A stretch of DNA of 64,000 nucleotides, taken from Dimorphilus gyrociliatus. Taxonomy: Eukaryota > Animalia > Annelida. The stretch lies in NCBI GenBank assembly GCA_904063045.1, contig CAJFCJ010000016.1, positions 434,001 through 498,000 on the forward strand, in the 5' to 3' direction. The notes beneath the pieces are model-generated. The model was given only the letters and a program-made list of their open reading frames with translations. It was not told the DNA's origin and searched no databases. The translations under genes were made by a program, and so were the position numbers. Positions 2 to 35,179 of this stretch are shown here, one piece after another. Positions within the stretch are counted from its first letter, which is position 1. The number at the start of each line of letters is the position of its first letter.

Positions 2-1575
2 CTCATTTCGTTTACAACTCTGTTTGTGTCCTGCTTACCATTGATGGGCTTAGCTCCAATAGCTTTTAAATCAAAACTATGCAGATCGTGGTTGATTGCC
101 GAAGCATCCGACAACGTTCAAAGAGTATTTTACGCCGTATTCATAGCGGTAGCATCTTCTAATCTCCTAGTGGCTTTTGCCTGCAATGCAAAAACAGTGA
201 AAGACGTTTACAGTATGAAAGATTCTCTCACAGATCAGAGACAGGTAGCAGAATTTTCACTACTGATAGCAGTGGTTACAATAGTTTTTTATCTGGCCTG
301 GTTCCCTGTCTTGGTAAGTCCCATTTCTTTCTGTCCCCCTTTTTTTTCGTTGAAAGAAAATCAATAGCGGCGTTCATGAATAGAACTTTATTATGCTGGA
401 ATCCTTCACACTGCAATTTTTACAGAGCACGAACAGCAAAAATATATTAGTTCTGGAATAAAGGAAAAACTATAATAGCAAAGTGTGTTTTTTAGGAAAA
501 TAAAGCATATCCGCATTACGTCAGATAATCCAAAATCAGATAAGGTTTCTTTTTACTATCGATCAAGAAAAGCAAGAGATGCGCTTTGACAGTTTATTAT
601 ATTATACTGCAATACGAAATTCTCCCAAGTAATATAATTTCCTCCTTTTCTTTCTCATCCTTTTATTTCTTTTCCCTATCTCTTCTTCTCCTCTTCAAAC
701 TAAAAGGGTAAAGAGAGAGAGAGAGGAGAATAAAAGAGAAAAGTGAGGCTGAGAGGGAAAAATTACCTTAAATTATCCTGCCTACTGCAGAAAAATGGAT
801 AAAAACAAACTTTTTTCTCTTCTAACGTAATAGAAGCTGGCGAACCGTGAAGGCGCACAGAACGAATATTGCAGTACTTCCCTATCAACTTCTGTTAAAC
901 TGCGCGGAAAAATAAAAAGGAAATGTTTACAATGCGTGACTGGAATATAATTCAGCCTAAAAAGTCAAAGACTACTGCAAAAAATTGCAGATATGTAGCT
1001 TTTAATAAAAATTGATGATTAAAATTGGCGGATCTTAATTCCGTCATGCTTATGTAAATAGCGATTTATTGCAGTTGCACCCTTTTAGTTGAAATCCTCG
1101 ACTAAATAAACTATGTAATTAGCCTAAAGGATGGTTAATTAACTTTCTCTTTTCTCTTTAGGGCTAATTAAATGATATTTTTTTTACCCTCCAGGTAATT
1201 ATTCCGATGTCTCAGGCTGGTTATCAAGTGGGCCGCGTAGCAATCATTTACTGCTTAATATCACCCACTCTGACTGGAATGACAAACCCTCTCTTATACG
1301 CAATTTGCAGTAGTACATATCGTAAATGTTATACTGCTATTTTGGGGAAAATTTGCAAGCTTATTACAGGCTGTACGCCTAAATCATGTAGGACTGAAGA
1401 AGAATTGACTGCAACAACTGCATCGACTACAGCAAATAGCGTTACAGCTTTACTAGAGAGTCGGACAGCAAACGACTGTCTCCTGGAAGGTCGTCTAGGG
1501 ATTGCAGCGCAATATAATATTTTGAAGGGTTCGAAATTGAGTTTGCTCAGTTCAGAAGAAGATGAAAGGATGTGA
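2..1575 (+). CDS. Rhodopsin-type (class A) GPCR, 3' part (TM4-TM7 and C-tail); exons ..313 and 1195..1575; 5' end lies outside the window
   Basis: The frame is open from nt 2 with hydrophobic helices and a TM6-like VFYLAWFP. A phase-0 intron (GT at 314, AG at 1193-1194) joins it to an exon with the TM7 NPxxY motif (MTNPLLY) and a basic/Cys helix 8. Ligand class not assigned. Confidence 0.8.
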
Positions 1576-13939: not shown

Positions 13940-16900
13940 TTATTCAGCCATTTCTTCCTTAACAAGTAAACTTGTATCTGCAGGTTCGGGCCGATCTTCA
14001 GCGCAAATAGGATGATAAAATTTCCCACCAACCAAGATTCCATCTTTCAAAAGCCATTGGTCCTGTTCGTCATTAAAGAATGTTGTCAAAGGTTCTTGAC
14101 AAATTGCGCAAATGTTCTCCTTATCATTAATACTCGCTACTGGAAATTTAGTTCCCACAGCGGTTGCAACGGGAACATTTGTTTCATTATCATCACCATC
14201 TTTCAAGGTTGAGAAATCTTTGATAAGTTTCCATTTATCTATCGTAGGAAACCATTTCCTATGCTTTTTAATTTTAGATTGAGTCATATTAGTACGATTT
14301 TTCTCGTAATGACCGTCTAAGTGACTGGCGTAAAGTTCCTGATTGTTTTCAGTAAACCTTATACCACAGTTAGTGCATTGGTAACCCAAATATAATCTCT
14401 GAACAACACCTGGCTGATGAGTTTTAAGAACACTCTTCTTAAAGGATGTCATATCAGATACATTTTCAAGCCTAGCATTTTCATTATCCAAAGGAAACGC
14501 AATTTTTGATCCATAAGCGACTGCAGGTGAGACAATTGTGGGCGTTTCGGGTTCGGGTTGTGCTTCATCTTTAACCGCACGCTTGGGGGTTACAGAAGTA
14601 TCGTTAGTGTTTGACTTATCACCTGCATTTATCAACCATTCCAATATTTTACTAGGATTTGAACCAATCGAATTTGTTAATGAGTCAAAAATATTAAATG
14701 AACCATTATTTTTGGATGATTCGGCTGGTGCTTGAAGATCATTCGATCTCCAATTCATTTGAGGAGCGGGAAGTGAGCTCTGTTCTGGTCTAGCTACTGG
14801 TCGATCGCTTATTAAGCCACCACTTGCTCCTCCTATCCTAACTCCTCCTGCGTTATTGGGCATTGGAGCTGGTGGCATTGAAGCCGGTGGCATTGAAGCC
14901 GGTGGCATTGAAGCTGGTGGCATTGAAGCTGGTGGCATTGGAGGTGGGGGCCTTCGACCTCCATAAGGATTAGATGGACTGACATAGTTGTCAATAGCTG
15001 CTGAATCATATACCGGACAAAGCCCTATTCGTCCATTATTAAAAGGTTCAGCATAATTGTTAACCTGAAGAAATATTTAACGCCTGTTACAACTGGTATT
15101 CAACAGAAAAATATTTTATTTTCTTACCTCATCAGGGCATGCATCGGGATTTCTATTAAGTGGTCGTTTTACTCCATGAGGATCTGGAAGAAGGGGGTGC
15201 TTATATCCTGTTCCACTACCTTCTCTCATATTATATTTTCTTCCCCAATCTTTCTCAGTTTTTAGATAAGGTGGCTCATTATGAGATTGATTATACCCGT
15301 AGTCAGAAGGAAAGTTACCACGCTGTGGCTGTGATAAAATTGGATTTACTCTTGAAGTAGAAGTAAGCTTAGGTATTCTTGGTAATTGCTTAATATCAAC
15401 CTTGTTAGCATAGTTATCTTTCCTGAAAGAGCAATAATTTAATTTTCTAATATAGTGCTTTCTATATTGAAACTCACTTATCATCCTTTGGTCTCTTTTG
15501 TCCCTTTCTATGTTTCCTATGTCTATCATTTTGTCTATCATTTTGCCTATCATTTTGTCTAGGGTCCATTAATTTTCTATTATCTGGTGATATCCTCCTG
15601 CGCTTATTTTCAGGATGGTGATTAAAACCCCCTCTGGCAAGTTTTTCTTTATCGCTTAAGGTTGGTGCTTCTTTAACTGGTTTTACATTTTTGTCATCTT
15701 CATGTTCTTCGCTGTAACGACGGCGATACGTTCGTTTTTCTTGGAAAGTTTTATTTTTCGTGTGAACATCTCCATCAGAATTCGATTTCTTCTCACTCAA
15801 TTCTCTCATTTTGCGGTCTTTTTTCTCACTTTTCGAGCTACCCTTGTTTTTTATTTTTTCGTCACTCATCTGTTTTCATAAGTCCAATATCATTATTCAT
15901 ATCCTCACAAGTGTTTAGACAAGTATTAATATTAGCAATTAGAATCTGATATAAAATATATTGCCCCTTTTAAACTTAATTGGGAACTAATTTTTATGCA
16001 TTAACCAGATTTAACAAGCTTGAACTTTGTTTTTCTTTGTTGATTTCATTATATAAAGGGGGGAAACTTAGCCCTAATAGAAGATCTTCCTTTGAGATAG
16101 AAAGCTTGGAACAAGAGAGATTATAAGAATTATTAGTTCAATATACTAATATTGTTAATTTGAAGGATTAAATAGTGAAGATTATATTTTTCGAATGGCG
16201 AAGAGTACGTTTCGACTCAGTGTGGAAATATATGACTACTAAAAGAATGAGATTCAATCTCTTAGGCCTTAGGTATATATTTGCATTGTTTTTTTTTTTC
16301 CTAAAATAAAATATAAACGCGGAAGATTGACGAACAAGCATATGCGTCTATATAATATTAACCAAATAATATCATATAAATAATACACATTAAAAATATT
16401 AAAAAGATATATTTTGAAAATAATTTTTACTTTCTTCCCTTGAATTCTTCAATATTTTTAATATTTGAGCCAGCCAAAGCCAATATATTAAGGCATTAAA
16501 AACTAAACTCACTTTGTTCAGCTTTGCACGAATCTCTGCAACATCCGATTCCAATTTCATTTCTTCTTGCAATTTGGTCAATTGTTCTTGCTTTTCTATA
16601 AGAATTTTCCTTAAACTGTCTGAGTCGTCTGATTCTCCTTGCGGCGACGGCTTTACGTATATATACAAAACAAAAACATTTCAAAACTGCACAAGTCCAA
16701 CACAGGATAAGAAAGACCAGCTTTCACCATTCTTTATTTTATTTACATCAAATAGCTTATAAAAAATGAAACCTACATTACATATTGTAAGCAATCTACA
16801 AGCGTATGTTCGTTCAAGTCGAATATTCCCCAAGCGTATTTACTTTTTATTGAAACAATTGTAAAATTTTATTGATCAAAAAACAAACTTAAAGCTGATT

Positions 16901-18021: not shown

Positions 18022-18683
18022 TGTTTTTTCGGTTTCTTCGTTCTTCTAAAAAAATTCCACTTGAACGACCCCTTCCCGTCGGTAGAGGAGACGCGTGATT
18101 GAAGTTAAGGCATAGAATTTAGGAATACGTTCTTCTTGACGCCATCTTGAATAATGTTGCTTCTCTGTCTGTTTGAAAGGAGACTTCTGATTGGTCTACA
18201 CTGCTGGTTGTTTTAAGGCTGGCGATTGGTTCTTTTCGAAGCGGAAACTACTTTAAACTAGTTTGAAATATTTAATTGGCGTCACACAGCCAATTAGTAT
18301 GGTTAAAAGTTGACAAGTACTCAACTCATTTTTTAATGATCATTTATTTAAAGAATTTATTTATTCTTATTTGTGAATATTGGAAAACAACGTTAGAATA
18401 TAAAAATTCTAAGAGCGAAAACTGTTATACAGCTTTGCTCTAGCAAGTACCCTTGCCCTACCTCTAATCGCGATTGTTTCAATTATCTTTAAAAGTTACT
18501 TGTTTCATTAATTTTAGTAAGAATTAAAATATTTGCTTGGTTTAATTTTTCGTCGTATATTGTTTATGATATTAAATAATGTTTTATTTTGCAATGGAGA
18601 AAGCCTGTGGTTGTTATTCCCTCTTGTAATCACGTGATCACGACGCCATATTTTTTTAAATTTCACACTGGATAACTCAAAAA
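18022..18683. promoter_or_regulatory. Bidirectional promoter PCF11/DCP2 with four CCAAT boxes and an E-box
   Basis: Head-to-head ATGs at 18021 (-) and 18684 (+). ATTGG at 18190, 18225 and 18275, CCAAT at 18290, TCACGTGA at 18630. Confidence 0.65.
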
Positions 18684-28400: not shown

Positions 28401-29367
28401 TGGCCAAGTTTTACAGGTAACTAGCTTATAAATAATCAAAAACATAGTTCAACGTTGTATCCAATATATAGCAGGTTAAAGCTCAACCACCCAAGAAAGA
28501 AACTCCAGAGAAGTCTAAACCTTCTGTTGCAAACGCCTTTCTACCATTACAGGTAGCGCGTAAAATCTTTTATTATAATAGAAATCGTTAATACTTATTT
28601 TGAAATCATAGGTTCAACGGCGGATAGGCTCTCAAAAAGACAATGGAGAGAAAGAAATAGGCGATAACAGAGGCTCAAGTTCTAAAGACGATGTTATGAA
28701 AGCAATTTCTGACAACGTATTAAGGTATTTAACAAAAGACTCACAGAAGGATCAGCAAACGCGCTTGCAAGTTTTAAAATATTTAGCTGGTCAGACGAGA
28801 ATCATTCTTCAAAAGAAAGATATGGATAAATTGCTCGAAAACTCTAAGCTCTCAATTGGAGATATCAGGGAGGCAGTACAGGAAGATGAAGTAAAAGAAC
28901 AGTTTAAGACTATTATCCGCTTGAAATTAGTCAATGTTAATGAATTGGAAGTGATGTTTAAAAAAGTAGAGGAAAAAAATGGCGAAGATGAAAATAAAAA
29001 GAGAGAATTGATACACTATTTAACGAATAGAACCCTAGAAACCATTTTGGGTACTGAGGAAGAAACTTTTGAAAAGCAACCGAAACAGCATGTAAAACCG
29101 AAACAAGAAGTAAAAAAGCAAGATATAAGGAGAGATGAAAAAGTAACTAGGAAATCTAGAAAAGATAGCGAGAAAGAAGAGAAATCCAGAACGGAAGAAA
29201 TAACTCCTGCTGCTAACGAAATGTTACGAATTTTAGAAAATCTATCACTAAAAGAAGCACCAAAAGAAAAAGAAAGTACAGTTGTTGATACAACCCAAAC
29301 AGAGCCGAAATCCTCTGAAGCAAAACCCAGGAGAAATAGATTAGCAGCAAACTTTTCATTAAACTAG
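22420..29367 (+). CDS. XRN1: 5'-3' exoribonuclease 1, multi-exon (exon 1 22420..22494, exon 2 from 22899)
   Basis: MGVPKFYRWISERYP..FDNLYLDMNGIIH, DGVAPRAKMNQQRGRRF, FDSNCITPGT, PGEGEHKIMDYIR, YGLDADL, GNDFIPHLP, WFYPFHYAP, PFEQLMGVLP and the C-terminal RLAANF motif, typical of XRN1 rather than XRN2. Confidence 0.95.
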
Positions 29368-31141: not shown

Positions 31142-31339
31142 CTGAGTAGAATGGAAGAGGGAAACTAGCAAGAAATGAAGAAAATATTAGGATAGATAAA
31201 GAGACGGATGTATAAATTGAAGTGAGAGAGAGGGAGAATTGTGAGAAGTAAAAAGAACAAATGAGCATATGCACAGTATTATATATATATATATATATAC
31301 ATTTTGAACTTTAGGGTTTCTTCTATGACTAATAAGTAA

Positions 31340-32090
31340 AATATGTACGCAGGAGGCGTCGTGGTCGTTCTAATTAAGCCTAACATTAAGCGACGTGTGC
31401 CTAGGCGGCCAATGTAAAAAAAAAGCTAAAAAAAAATTATAAAAAAACGGCGGTTGAACTTCAAATTTTCGAATTTTGAATAAATTTGGTCGAAAAACGG
31501 CTGGATATGTTTACAGAAACCTATCAAATCTTTTTTTTATATTCAAACAACTGTAACAAAAAGAGTTTGCACAAGGATCCGTTTTATTTATAGGTCCGCC
31601 GGGCGCCGTAGGACAGTATTATTTTTACTTTGACCTACTATGATAAAATTTATTCGATTCTCTTCTAACCCAAGGACAATTATAGGACTAAATTAGTAAT
31701 TTTAAACTCTGCCTGAGCAAATATAAAGTGGAAATAGTCCTATCAGCATTCAATCTTTTGAACCATAGAATTCCAGACGTCGAATAGACATTGCAGACAT
31801 TAGGGGAAGTCCCCGGGAAATTCCTGGGGAAATTCCTAGAATTTTCGGATGATCATTTAATAATAATTAAATAGAATTTAATCATTTTTATTTATATAAT
31901 AAAATTTAAATTAATTAAAATTTTCTATTCTTGGAATTTTCCGTTAAACAAATTTTTAGCGGCGCGAAAAATAGTCTAGACGGCGCGCGCATAAAAAGTG
32001 TGACGTAAGCAGTTGAATTCTCGAATCGGTTAAGTACAGTTAAAAATCCAGACGATTTTCGTCCGGTCTAAAAATATTACTGAATGAAAT
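31340..32090 (+). promoter_or_regulatory. CpG-rich promoter/enhancer upstream of let-7/miR-125 (CCAAT 31409, kB array 31803..31836, E2F GGCGCGAAAA 31961, CRE-like TGACGTAA 32001)
   Basis: A non-coding CpG-rich island within AT-rich DNA carrying several consensus sites. No protein-coding gene lies on the + strand downstream before MRPS33, so the miRNA pair is the nearest candidate target. Confidence 0.55.
31803..31836. promoter_or_regulatory. Three tandem NF-kB/Rel consensus sites
   Basis: GGGAAGTCCC (31804), GGGAAATTCC (31815) and GGGAAATTCC (31827) all fit GGGRNWYYCC. Confidence 0.6.
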
Positions 32091-32955
32091 CGTTAGAGTC
32101 TTGTTTTTTAAAAAAAAAGAATCATTAGAAAAAAAATGTGAGTATAATTTCAAATTTAAATATTATATTCTACAAAAATTATTTCAATTATCTTATCAAT
32201 TACTTAAAAACTCTAATTTATTAATCAAGTTATACATTTATAAGCTAACAGATTATTTATTAATTTTATTACTAACGGAAACACTTAAAGAGCACAACGT
32301 TTATTATGTTATTGATTATATGTACTGTAAATATATCTGGTATATACGGTATGTATGTATGTATATATATATATATATACTGTATATATATATTCTCTGT
32401 ATATTCTTTTTATATATCGTCATATATACACGATGCATAGATACGGTAGGTTTTTTTTCTTCTCTTTTTAACTGGCTGTATTCATGTGTTTAGTTAGGTA
32501 TATATAATATATACAGACAGTATTCACAGTGAAGAACCAGAATAGTACAATAAGTTATAACAATCCCGGTACAAAATTGCGCTAGTTAAATTATATACAT
32601 ATATATGGATATATTTGTCCTTGCAAATATGTAAATAAGTACATATATACTTTAATATAAGTATTAAGATACTATGTATTTTATTTTTATTATATGTATA
32701 ATAAAAACTTTTTTCTTCTCCCTCTCTTTCTCTCTCTCTCTATCTCTTTTTTTTCTCTGTTCCTTCTTTCTTCTTTCTTTCTTTCTAGGGAATCATTTAG
32801 CCTGAAAACTTATATTAAACTGTATTGGAATAAAATAAATAAACGAGCTGTCTTTTCTCGAATCATTTTATGCAGACATTGCGGATGATATAGACAGACA
32901 TTAATCTTTTTTTTTTTCTTTCTTTTTTTTTCAGACTAGATCATTCCTGTGTAAA

Positions 32956-33038
32956 TCTAGTTGAGGTAGTTGGTAGTATGGACAAGTACTACAACACACT
33001 TTCAGGAGGGATCCGTGCTATCAACTAACTTTCCTGGA
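32956..33038 (+). ncRNA. let-7: let-7 family pre-miRNA; predicted mature 5p 32962..32983 UGAGGUAGUUGGUAGUAUGGAC
   Basis: Seed GAGGUAG. The 5p arm pairs almost fully with 33012..33032 (UCCGUGCUAUCAACUAACUUU). Lower stem UCUAG/CUGGA, 3p arm ending CUUUCC, long loop with GGAG, and miR-125 about 380 nt downstream. Confidence 0.85.
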
Positions 33039-33415
33039 TTTTATACACTCTATCAACTGTAATATTTAGAAAGAAGAGGAATAAGGAATTTTTCTTTCGC
33101 TATTCAATCATCATCACTATTATCGCCTTAGTCGTCGTCGTCGTTATAACTGTTGTCATCGCTTACATCAATTATCGTCGAGACAGCTTCTTCTTCAGCA
33201 CCTTTTCTTCTTGCTGCTTTTGCTACTGTAATTTTCTACTTCTACAGTTTTTCCATTCTTCTTATATATGATATAACAAGTGAACTACGTTTTGCTTGAG
33301 GATTGTTCTAGAGTCTAGGACAGATATTGAAATAATCTACTGTTTTAAGGATTTGAGGGAAGGAAATGCTAAAGAACGAAATGAGACAAAGTTTGAATAG
33401 GCAAACAGTTTGACA

Positions 33416-33491
33416 GTCACTATGTCCCTGAGACCCTAACTGTGCAATAAGTTAGATTGGCACAAGTTAGGGAGCTTGGGAATAGAGTGAT
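33416..33491 (+). ncRNA. mir-125: miR-125 (lin-4 family) pre-miRNA; predicted mature 5p 33425..33446 UCCCUGAGACCCUAACUGUGCA
   Basis: The first 17 nt are identical to canonical UCCCUGAGACCCUAACUUGUGA. The 3p arm GCACAAGUUAGGGAGCUUGGGA and lower stem UCAC/GUGA form a hairpin. Confidence 0.92.
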
Positions 33492-35179
33492 TTTTATTTT
33501 CTTCGAGCCTATTTTCCTTATATTTGATTAATCTCGATCACGTGACTTTTACCATATCTTACTAAGAGGTCAATGTCATTTCAATGTTGACTATTCAAAG
33601 AACCTTTTATTAATTAGCGAGCTATTGCGAATGGAAAATTCGAATGGGAGGGTTTTTATTTAAATAACAGCACATTGTATTTACATCGATTAGTTAATTT
33701 TCAAGTGGCTGATTCTTTATATATTTTGTTACGTGCACGTCTGTTTCCCGTTTAGAGAATCGATAATTAAACCAACGAATATAGGATAGATTCTCTCCCT
33801 GTTCCCTTATTTTTTTTACTCTTTTTCACAAGAACAGCCTTTCAACCGTTCACTTCTTCCTCTAAGTATACAAATGTATATTAAGCAATTAAGCGTATTT
33901 TTTTAGATTATTTGTTCATTTTTTATAAAGAATATTGATTTCAGTAACTTAAAAAAACTGATGAACTTGAACTTGCTTACGTAGATATTTTATCGCTCTT
34001 TTTTATTATTATTATATATATATAGCAGATATTTTTTATAGTTGATCACGTGATTATTACTTTTTTTTCAAATTAGCTCGTCGTTATTCAGTAAATTTCT
34101 TCATGATCAATTCGTTTTTCTATCGATTATCACACATAAATTTCCATTATCTTGAAAAAGACTTATTGACTTGCATAGTTGATCACGTTTGATTATAGAG
34201 ATAAAATCTAATTTTATAATTGATTTACATCTCTTAATAAATTTTTACAAAGATTATTGTTTTATATATATATATATGTAGAATGTTTATTTGCGCATTA
34301 TGCAAAGGTAAAGAGAAATTACCTAATTACATAAATCATCTTAGATGGAATAAAAATCTGGCCAAGTATATATTTTCAGTTATGTCAGATATTTATGAAC
34401 CCTCTCTCTCTCTCTCTTTTGTTTTTAAATAGATGATTGCAGTTGAAGGAAAGTAAGCTAGCCAGTGAGAGAGAGTGAGAAAAATAGAGGGTGGGGGTTA
34501 GGAGGCGAGTCTGTTAAAAAATATCAATTGCTGTAAAATGTCAGCCGTCCGAGTTGATGCCAAGTGTCTAATTTAGATAAATTATTATAATATACTCGAT
34601 TGATTAACTAGGTTAAAAAAGCTCACTATCGCTCTAGGCTGAAATCGGACCGTCATAAATCCCAATTTTCTTTTCCTTAACTTTATGCTCAAAGGCATTT
34701 TGCAACAGATCAACAGTTTTGAGCTATTCATCATTTTTATAAAGTTAACTTTCTATTCCCAGGAAGCCAGCTTATGTTATAGAAAGGTAAAGAGAAATGA
34801 TGTAACATCAAAATATATTGCACAATACTCGGCAAACGCTTACATTTTTTTTAATAAATATTAACAATGATAAGAAATAAGAAAAAAATGAATTTGAATT
34901 ATCAATCGAACATGGTCTAGAAGAAACTGAGATAGTGAATAATAAATAAAAAAGAGACTGTCAAAATGAAATTGTGAGATTGCTATCAACTGAAATTAGA
35001 TCGGAGGTGAAAGTTATTAATTAATTTAAGAAGAAAAAATAATTACAAATCTTTTCTTATTCATTTATTTATATTTTTGTTCTATAACGTCTTCTTGTTT
35101 TATTCTTTTTTATATTGTTGCATATTTTTTGCGGTGTTACATATTCTTTATGAACACAGTTTTTTTAAAGAAATATTTT

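What the first reader, a model, noticed from the sequence alone, without database searches (positions are those of the whole stretch)
32956..33038. Highly divergent let-7 with compensatory hairpin changes
Seen: predicted mature UGAGGUAGUUGGUAGUAUGGAC versus canonical UGAGGUAGUAGGUUGUAUAGUU, differing at positions 10, 14, 19, 21 and 22 with the seed intact. The changes at 10 (A>U), 14 (U>A) and 19 (A>G) are matched by Watson-Crick partners in the 3p arm, which argues for a maintained, functional hairpin rather than sequencing error. The loop retains a GGAG (33005..33008). Established: mature let-7 is nearly invariant across bilaterians, its 3' supplementary region (nt 11-16) matters for targets such as lin-41, and GGAG is the LIN28 zinc-knuckle site. 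Inference: relaxed or redirected 3' pairing, with co-evolved target sites. The ORF track cannot show this feature.
Basis: partly seen in the sequence, partly recalled or inferred. Interest (0 to 1): 0.85.

Follow-up and report, generated by a model that had tools for sequence, protein, structure and literature searches.

The report
Derived let-7 microRNA, conserved in dinophilid worms
This is a real let-7-family microRNA gene of the tiny annelid Dimorphilus gyrociliatus: its targeting core is unchanged, five of the usually invariant remaining letters have changed, and a related worm keeps the same version, so it is functional and modestly unusual rather than a new kind of thing.

Summary
Window 32962-32983 (+) reads UGAGGUAGUUGGUAGUAUGGAC. 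It differs from canonical let-7 at g10, g14, g19, g21 and g22, and the seed is intact. It sits on the 5' arm of a stable hairpin (32956-33038).

- **Compensation:** g10, g14, g19 and also g21 have matching Watson-Crick changes on the 3' arm.
- **GGAG:** it lies at 33005-33008, in the same place as in the Rfam let-7 consensus.
- **Family score:** Rfam let-7 gives 37.8 bits, below the gathering score of 53.5.
- **Linkage:** a mir-125 hairpin lies 390 nt downstream on the same strand, which is the ancestral let-7/mir-125 arrangement.
- **Organism:** the window is Dimorphilus gyrociliatus, contig CAJFCJ010000016.1.
- **Conservation:** an unnamed relative (Logan assembly of SRR23372228; alignable non-coding DNA about 73-81% identical) has the same hairpin with one loop change in 83 nt, GGAG kept, and an identical mir-125 hairpin. 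This rules out assembly error and drift.

Retargeted 3' pairing with co-evolved target sites remains untested. Four of the five changes fall at positions where mutations are tolerated in C. elegans; only g14 lies in the critical g11-g16 stretch. The cloned schistosome let-7 is equally divergent.

Unchecked first-reader notes of this scan list two more let-7-like loci on other DNA of this genome, so this may be one of several let-7 sisters.

MirGeneDB 3.0 covers the species from its genome alone. No paper found discusses this variant.

The parts
32956..33038 (+). let-7-family precursor hairpin
   Evidence: Folds at -27.5 kcal/mol. Rfam RF00027 let-7 full-length match, 37.8 bits, E 4.4e-6 locally. 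82 of 83 nt identical in the relative at L004:15013-15095.
32948..33047 (+). extended basal stem of the pri-miRNA hairpin, with UG at 32948-32949 (-14/-13 from the predicted 5p start)
   Evidence: Fold of 32940-33055: -35.3 kcal/mol, z -3.7. UG read. The stretch is conserved in the relative (A1). That UG is a Drosha basal motif is from my own knowledge.
32962..32983 (+). predicted mature 5p guide UGAGGUAGUUGGUAGUAUGGAC (ends inferred by homology, no reads)
   Evidence: Seed identical to let-7. Differences at g10, g14, g19, g21 and g22.
33005..33008 (+). GGAG in the pre-element loop
   Evidence: Aligned with the GGAG of the Rfam let-7 consensus. Kept in the relative although the base just before it (33004) changed A>G.
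33014..33034 (+). predicted 3p (star) arm carrying the compensating bases (ends inferred from a 2-nt overhang rule)
   Evidence: Pair table: A opposite g10, U opposite g14, C opposite g19, U opposite g21. G-U wobbles opposite g12, g16 and g18.
32790..33057 (+). block conserved with the relative around the hairpin; ends at CAAC (33054-33057), 20 nt after the predicted 3p end
   Evidence: Alignment A1. blastn block 32764-33057 at 88% including an indel. Reading CAAC as a CNNC-type motif is inference.
32906..32935 (+). conserved polypyrimidine tract ending in CAG, acceptor-like, 21 nt before the hairpin base
   Evidence: Conserved apart from a 12-nt shorter T run in the relative. No RNA evidence.
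33415..33492 (+). mir-125 hairpin, partner of let-7 in the cluster
   Evidence: Folds at -32.4 kcal/mol, z -4.1. 100% identical in the relative at L001 (-). No Rfam match.
33425..33446 (+). predicted mature miR-125 UCCCUGAGACCCUAACUGUGCA (first 17 nt canonical, 3' end derived)
   Evidence: The canonical sequence is from my own knowledge.

Best explanation
This is a genuine let-7-family microRNA gene under purifying selection. It is the let-7 that sits in the ancestral let-7/mir-125 cluster of Dimorphilus gyrociliatus.

Proposed mechanism (inferred):
- A plus-strand primary transcript from the 6-kb gap between XRN1 and TOMM40 carries the let-7 and mir-125 hairpins 390 nt apart.
- Drosha and Dicer release a 5p guide of about 22 nt with the unchanged let-7 seed GAGGUAG, so it recognises ordinary let-7 seed sites.
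- Its non-seed half is derived at g10, g14, g19, g21 and g22, and the 3p arm changed with it to keep the hairpin.
- The g14 change alters the g11-g16 supplementary-pairing stretch. The guide should therefore rank targets that depend on 3' pairing differently from canonical let-7a, much as let-7 'sister' microRNAs of nematodes and vertebrates differ from let-7a.
- The loop GGAG is retained, so LIN28-type control of processing is possible.

Shown here: sequence, fold, compensation, linkage to mir-125, conservation in a second species. Inferred: transcription, cleavage sites, arm choice, effect on targets, LIN28 control.
For: Sequence and differences.
Stable hairpin.
Rfam let-7 is the top hit in the window, matched over the full model with canonical pairs at all four compensated positions.
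mir-125 hairpin 390 nt downstream on the same strand.
The window is D. gyrociliatus GCA_904063045.1, contig CAJFCJ010000016.1.

Related species (Logan SRR23372228):
- TOMM40 exon 85% and XRN1 last exon 48% identical in protein.
- Same gene order DCP2-HSP70-XRN1-let-7 and mir-125-TOMM40-ARPC4-BLOC1S2.
- The let-7 hairpin is identical except for one loop base and mir-125 is identical.
- Alignable neighbouring non-coding DNA is 73-81% identical, and the let-7 to mir-125 spacer does not align at all.
- With 19-25% background divergence, at most one change in 83 nt has probability 5e-7 to 1e-9.

Literature: annelids normally keep a tight mir-100/let-7/mir-125 cluster (PMC3384580). g11-g16 is the critical non-seed stretch of let-7a (PMC9161110).
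Against: The Rfam score of 37.8 bits is below the let-7 gathering score of 53.5. At genome scale the model match alone would not be significant.
No small-RNA reads exist for this species: MirGeneDB 3.0 lists it as genome-only with predicted reads (PMC11701709). Expression, cleavage sites and arm choice are therefore unproven.
mir-100 is absent from the window, so the cluster is not the complete ancestral one.
The two species have identical arms, so the compensation is seen only against the family consensus, not as covariation between close relatives.
Confidence: 0.87

Rival explanations
1. It is one of several let-7 paralogues. A near-canonical let-7 elsewhere in the genome keeps the ancestral job (lin-41 and similar targets). 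This cluster-linked copy diverged after duplication and has its own target preferences. This refines the best explanation rather than contradicting it.
For: Unchecked first-reader notes of this scan list 'let-7 with a compensated A10>C substitution inside DDX1 intron 12', 'Divergent, solitary let-7 in a ceramide-kinase intron', and mir-100/mir-125 pairs without let-7. The mir-125 next to this let-7 also has a derived 3' end, as expected for a diverged duplicate cluster. Non-seed sequence distinguishes let-7a from its sisters in C. elegans (PMC9161110).
Against: I could read none of the other loci. The attempt to walk along the contig stopped at window coordinate 73,728. Protostomes usually have a single let-7 (PMC3384580). 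Even the noted DDX1 copy is said not to be fully canonical.
Confidence: 0.5
2. One reading: this is the animal's principal or only let-7. Its 3' pairing has been redirected, and target sites in lin-41, lin-28 and hunchback have co-evolved.
For: It holds the ancestral position next to mir-125. The variant is fixed in two diverged species. A precedent for rewiring exists: Japonica-group Caenorhabditis lack let-7a, and divergent family members target lin-41 (bioRxiv 10.1101/2020.11.10.377101).
Against: No target site was examined. Other let-7-like loci are reported in the genome (unchecked). Four of the five changes lie where C. elegans tolerates mutation, so little co-evolution may be needed.
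Confidence: 0.3
3. It is a chance hairpin with a let-7 seed, a decaying pseudogene, or an assembly or sequencing error.
For: The score is below the Rfam gathering threshold. There are no expression data.
Against: There is near-perfect identity in an independent assembly of another species amid diverged flanks. Four changes are compensated on both sides. It is linked to mir-125 in both species.
Confidence: 0.02

Closest known systems
Canonical bilaterian let-7 (let-7a; Rfam RF00027; the let-7 of the mir-100/let-7/mir-125 cluster)
   Same: Identical g1-g9, including the seed. Mature strand on the 5' arm. Hairpin of about 80 nt with a long loop carrying GGAG just before the 3p arm. mir-125 a few hundred nt downstream on the same strand.
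   Different: Five non-seed changes (g10, g14, g19, g21, g22), whereas g9-g22 is described as almost perfectly conserved across bilaterians (PMC9161110). Rfam score below gathering. No mir-100 within the window.
let-7 'sister' microRNAs (nematode miR-48/84/241; vertebrate let-7b-i and miR-98)
   Same: Same seed and different 3' half. This is the feature that separates their target preference from that of let-7a (PMC9161110). The Rfam mir-84 model also matches weakly (21.7 bits).
   Different: Those sisters are extra copies beside a canonical let-7a and usually lie outside the let-7/mir-125 position. Here the derived copy sits in the ancestral cluster position, and the presence of a canonical copy is unverified.
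Platyhelminth let-7, e.g. sja-let-7 GGAGGUAGUUCGUUGUGUGGU (cloned and Northern-verified, PMC2603315)
   Same: A spiralian let-7 with five differences from canonical. It shares g10 A>U and g19 A>G. In flatworms the cluster is also broken up and lacks mir-100 (PMC3384580).
   Different: Flatworms are fast-evolving and have lost the cluster. Dimorphilus keeps let-7/mir-125 tightly linked. g14 is unchanged in the schistosome sequence.
Japonica-group Caenorhabditis lacking let-7a (Nelson and Ambros, bioRxiv 10.1101/2020.11.10.377101)
   Same: A bilaterian lineage in which divergent let-7-family members, not canonical let-7a, are proposed to regulate lin-41.
   Different: There the let-7 gene itself is absent. 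Here the gene is present but derived. Whether Dimorphilus lacks an exact let-7a is not established.

Membership tests
let-7 microRNA family (seed family / MirGeneDB LET-7) | Seed g2-g8 GAGGUAG at the 5' end of the 5p arm | tested here: met
   TGAGGTAG at 32962-32969 is the only copy in the window. It sits at the let-7 position on the 5' arm.
let-7 microRNA family (seed family / MirGeneDB LET-7) | Imperfect hairpin precursor with at least 16 paired bases in the miRNA duplex | tested here: met
   19 of 20 duplex positions pair under the Rfam structure. MFE -27.5 and -35.3 kcal/mol, z -2.6 and -3.7.
let-7 microRNA family (seed family / MirGeneDB LET-7) | Conservation of the hairpin in other species with diverged flanks | tested here: met
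   82 of 83 nt identical in the Logan SRR23372228 relative, against 73-81% in alignable flanks.
let-7 microRNA family (seed family / MirGeneDB LET-7) | Small-RNA reads from both arms with 2-nt 3' overhangs and a uniform 5' end | not testable with these tools
   No read data are reachable. MirGeneDB 3.0 states that Dimorphilus is genome-only with predicted reads.
Rfam RF00027 let-7 precursor | Covariance-model score at or above the curated gathering score (53.5 bits) | tested here: not met
   37.8 bits in the window and 36.9 bits in the relative. The match covers the full model and is the best family.
Ancestral mir-100/let-7/mir-125 cluster | mir-125 closely downstream on the same strand | tested here: met
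   The mir-125 hairpin at 33415-33492 starts 390 nt after the let-7 3p arm. The same holds in the relative, across a (CT)n gap between contigs.
Ancestral mir-100/let-7/mir-125 cluster | mir-100 upstream on the same strand | tested here: not met
   No match to miR-100 with up to 3 mismatches. The only ACCCGTAG lies in coding sequence at 15295. A mir-100/mir-125 pair is noted 17.3 kb beyond the window (unchecked, not reached).
Canonical let-7a (exact mature sequence) | g9-g22 identical to UAGGUUGUAUAGUU | tested here: not met
   Differences at g10, g14, g19, g21 and g22.
LIN28-regulated pre-let-7 | GGAG in the pre-element near the 3p arm | tested here: met
   GGAG at 33005-33008 aligns to the consensus GGAG and is kept in the relative.
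LIN28-regulated pre-let-7 | A LIN28 protein in the genome that binds this pre-element | not testable with these tools
   No LIN28 query sequence or genome-wide search was available. No note in the scan index mentions it.

The most novel reading that the evidence does not exclude
Dinophilid annelids have no exact let-7a at all. The let-7 in the ancestral cluster position has a changed g14 inside the critical g11-g16 stretch, and conserved targets such as lin-41 have co-evolved. That would make this slow-evolving, compact-genome annelid a second natural case, after Japonica-group Caenorhabditis, of a bilaterian living without canonical let-7a. It would also be a natural experiment on why g9-g22 is otherwise frozen.
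Probability: 0.3. Interest if true: 0.6.

Novelty: new member of a known kind. Interest (0 to 1): 0.4.

Why it matters
let-7a is described as almost perfectly conserved along its whole length across bilaterian phyla (PMC9161110), and the reason for conservation outside the seed is still debated. Here a variant is fixed and under purifying selection in two annelid species. It has one change inside the critical g11-g16 stretch and four in the 'tolerant' positions.

This gives a natural test of which non-seed letters really matter. The test is to compare the let-7 sites of lin-41, hunchback and similar genes in these worms with those of other annelids.

It is not a new kind of element. It is probably already catalogued from the genome in MirGeneDB 3.0, and equally derived let-7 sequences are known from flatworms.

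Tried and rejected
- **Rfam at gathering thresholds on the whole window:** no match. The let-7 match appears only in E-value mode.
- **mir-100 and canonical miR-125 searches with up to 3 mismatches:** none. mir-125 was found by its seed instead. The Rfam miRNA models do not recognise the mir-125 hairpin.
- **Exact 20-mer of the variant:** 0 hits in JGI metagenome contigs and 0 papers in full text.
- **Walk along the contig to the mir-100/mir-125 pair noted 17.3 kb past the window end:**
  - The RhoGAP ORF as read from the window was not an exact gene product.
  - Its annotated protein P0122 gave L007, which reaches only window coordinate 73,728.
  - The next gene outward (AMP-binding, 549 aa) has several exons, so it has no contiguous reference to hand in. 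A splice-model enumeration timed out. The walk was abandoned.
- **Second contig of the relative carrying TOMM40:** not shown by the tool. The let-7 of the relative was reached from the XRN1 side instead.
- **let-7 beside TOMM40 in other annelids:** Owenia (L008) and Paralvinella (L009) have none. The one seed match in L008 is not a hairpin.
- **Long-range helix between 32790-32808 and 32928-32946:** comparison with the relative shows two disrupted pairs and one gained pair, so the comparison with the relative does not support it.
- **let-7 seed matches in the window:** one non-self 7-mer, at 18438-18465, which is uninformative.
- **Identity of SRR23372228:** no paper in the library cites the run.
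- **Supplements of the MirGeneDB 3.0 and Platynereis genome papers:** not held.

Full report
**What is there.** The window reads TGAGGTAGTTGGTAGTATGGAC at 32962-32983 on the plus strand.
- A script comparison with the canonical let-7 22-mer gives differences at g10 (A>U), g14 (U>A), g19 (A>G), g21 (U>A) and g22 (U>C). g1-g9 are unchanged.
- With more flank (32940-33055) the stem extends to 32948-33047, at -35.3 kcal/mol and z -3.7. None of 200 shuffles folds as well.

**Family assignment.**
- Rfam at gathering thresholds finds nothing in the window.
- In E-value mode the let-7 model RF00027 matches 32956-33037 over its whole length at 37.8 bits, against a gathering score of 53.5. The E-value is 4.4e-6 for the local scan and 4.7e-4 for the whole window against all 4227 families.
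- The antisense mir-3596 hit and the weak mir-84 hit are the same hairpin.
- This is the only TGAGGTAG in 64 kb.

**Compensation.** In the cmscan alignment the model's pairs can be read off position by position.
- g10 is U-A (consensus A-U), g14 is A-U (consensus U-A), g19 is G-C (consensus A-U) and g21 is A-U (consensus U-A).
- The only non-standard pair inside the duplex is at g5.
- The 3p arm also carries three single changes that turn Watson-Crick pairs into G-U wobbles, opposite g12, g16 and g18.
g22 lies outside the stem.
- GGAG at 33005-33008 aligns exactly with the GGAG of the consensus.

**Context.**
- A second hairpin at 33415-33492 folds at -32.4 kcal/mol, z -4.1. Its 5' arm carries TCCCTGAGACCCTAACTGTGCA at 33425-33446.
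- This is miR-125 with a canonical first 17 nt and a derived 3' end (the canonical sequence is from my own knowledge). It starts 390 nt after the let-7 3p arm on the same strand.
- Hertel et al. describe a tightly linked mir-100/let-7/mir-125 cluster as the rule in protostomes, including the annelids Capitella and Platynereis (PMC3384580). The linkage therefore marks this hairpin as the positional let-7.
- mir-100 is not in the window.
- The pair lies in a gap of about 6 kb without long ORFs, between XRN1 (plus strand, stop at 29367) and TOMM40 (minus strand, 3' end near 35.2 kb).

**Organism.** The TOMM40 exon matches DgyrCDS10651 of Dimorphilus gyrociliatus. The locus is GCA_904063045.1 contig CAJFCJ010000016.1, and window coordinate = contig coordinate minus 434,000.

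**A related species.**
- The TOMM40 search also returned a Logan-assembly ORF at 85% identity. The XRN1 last-exon search returned one at 48% identity. Both come from run SRR23372228, and the XRN1 ORF also occurs in three other runs.
- The contigs show the same gene order: DCP2, HSP70, XRN1, then let-7 on L004, and mir-125, TOMM40, ARPC4, BLOC1S2 on L001.
- The two contigs end in the same (CT)n run, 55 nt after let-7 and about 315 nt before mir-125. The cluster is therefore intact in the relative too.
- L004:15013-15095 is identical to the window hairpin except for A>G at the position of 33004, one base before the retained GGAG.
- The mir-125 hairpin is identical.
- By blastn, the alignable non-coding DNA between XRN1 and TOMM40 is mostly 73-81% identical, and the let-7 to mir-125 spacer does not align at all.
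- With 19-25% background divergence, at most one change in 83 nt has probability between 5e-7 and 1e-9.
- This removes assembly error and neutral decay as explanations. It shows selection on both arms and on the loop.

**Processing signals (inference).**
- A UG sits at -14/-13 from the predicted 5p start, at 32948-32949.
- The conserved block around the hairpin ends at CAAC (33054-33057), 20 nt past the predicted 3p end.
- These resemble the basal UG and CNNC motifs of animal pri-miRNAs (my own knowledge). The spacing of the second is slightly off.

**How unusual is it?**
[quoted passage not shown] They find that g11-g16 are each essential in C. elegans, while mutations at g9-g10 and g17-g22 were phenotypically tolerated (PMC9161110).
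- Measured against that map, four of the five changes here are in tolerated positions and only g14 is in the critical stretch.
- Precedents exist. The cloned Schistosoma japonicum let-7 has five differences, including the same g10 A>U and g19 A>G (PMC2603315). Flatworm let-7 copies in general carry several non-seed substitutions (PMC3384580). Japonica-group Caenorhabditis lack let-7a and use divergent family members on lin-41.
- So a derived let-7 is known as a phenomenon. I found no report of one in an annelid.
- MirGeneDB 3.0 includes D. gyrociliatus as a genome-only species without reads (PMC11701709), so the locus is probably catalogued there. I could not see the entry.
- No paper in the library contains the variant sequence or discusses let-7 in this species.

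**What remains open.** This scan's index holds unchecked first-reader notes on other DNA of this genome:
- a let-7 with a compensated A10>C change in a DDX1 intron;
- a solitary divergent let-7 in a ceramide-kinase intron;
- mir-100/mir-125 pairs without let-7, one of them 17.3 kb beyond this window;
- let-7 sites near the lin-41 stop codon and downstream of hunchback.

If the other let-7 loci are real, this hairpin is one of several let-7 sisters, and the 'redirected pairing with co-evolved targets' reading weakens. I could not read any of them. The walk along the contig stopped at window coordinate 73,728, and no query sequence was available for DDX1, lin-41 or LIN28.

**Verdict.**
The hairpin is real, maintained and compensated, and GGAG is kept. 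The retargeting claim is untested, and 'highly divergent' is relative.
- It is a new member of a known kind and of moderate interest. Its main value is as a natural variant for testing the constraint on the non-seed part of let-7.

Noticed in passing
window 32790-32935: About 110 nt of sequence conserved with the relative, followed by a conserved polypyrimidine tract ending in CAG 21 nt before the hairpin base. It looks like a 3' splice acceptor inside the primary let-7 transcript. From memory, this recalls the splice acceptor just upstream of C. elegans pre-let-7. There is no RNA evidence here.
   Followed up: partly
window 32215-32345: A 130-nt AT-rich block 91% identical to the relative and unstructured (z +1.5). 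It ends near a donor-like GGTATGT at about 32344. It could be a first exon or promoter element of the let-7/mir-125 transcript.
   Followed up: partly
window 33500-33790: A 300-nt block downstream of mir-125, about 93% identical to the relative, with no significant fold (z -0.15). It contains CACGTG at 33539-33544 and ACGTGCACGTC at 33731-33741 (E-box-like). Function unknown.
   Followed up: partly
window 33425-33446: The cluster's miR-125 also has a derived 3' end (…AACUGUGCA instead of …AACUUGUGA, the latter from memory). It is 100% conserved in the relative. Both cluster members have therefore changed outside the seed.
   Followed up: partly
window 31314-32090: An upstream non-coding block 81% identical to the relative over about 800 nt. 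It includes the stretch where another note of this scan places NF-kB-like sites (31803-31836). I did not examine the sites.
   Followed up: no
window 639-772 (+): Weak Rfam E-value hits to the mir-3154 and mir-320 models (31.6 and 27.6 bits, far below gathering). Possibly a GC-richer hairpin.
   Followed up: no
L004 and L001 (Logan SRR23372228): An unnamed species with the same compact gene order as D. gyrociliatus over more than 25 kb (DCP2, HSP70, XRN1, let-7, mir-125, TOMM40, ARPC4, BLOC1S2). Protein identities run from 48% to 85%. It is a useful comparison genome for footprinting this genome's non-coding elements.
   Followed up: partly
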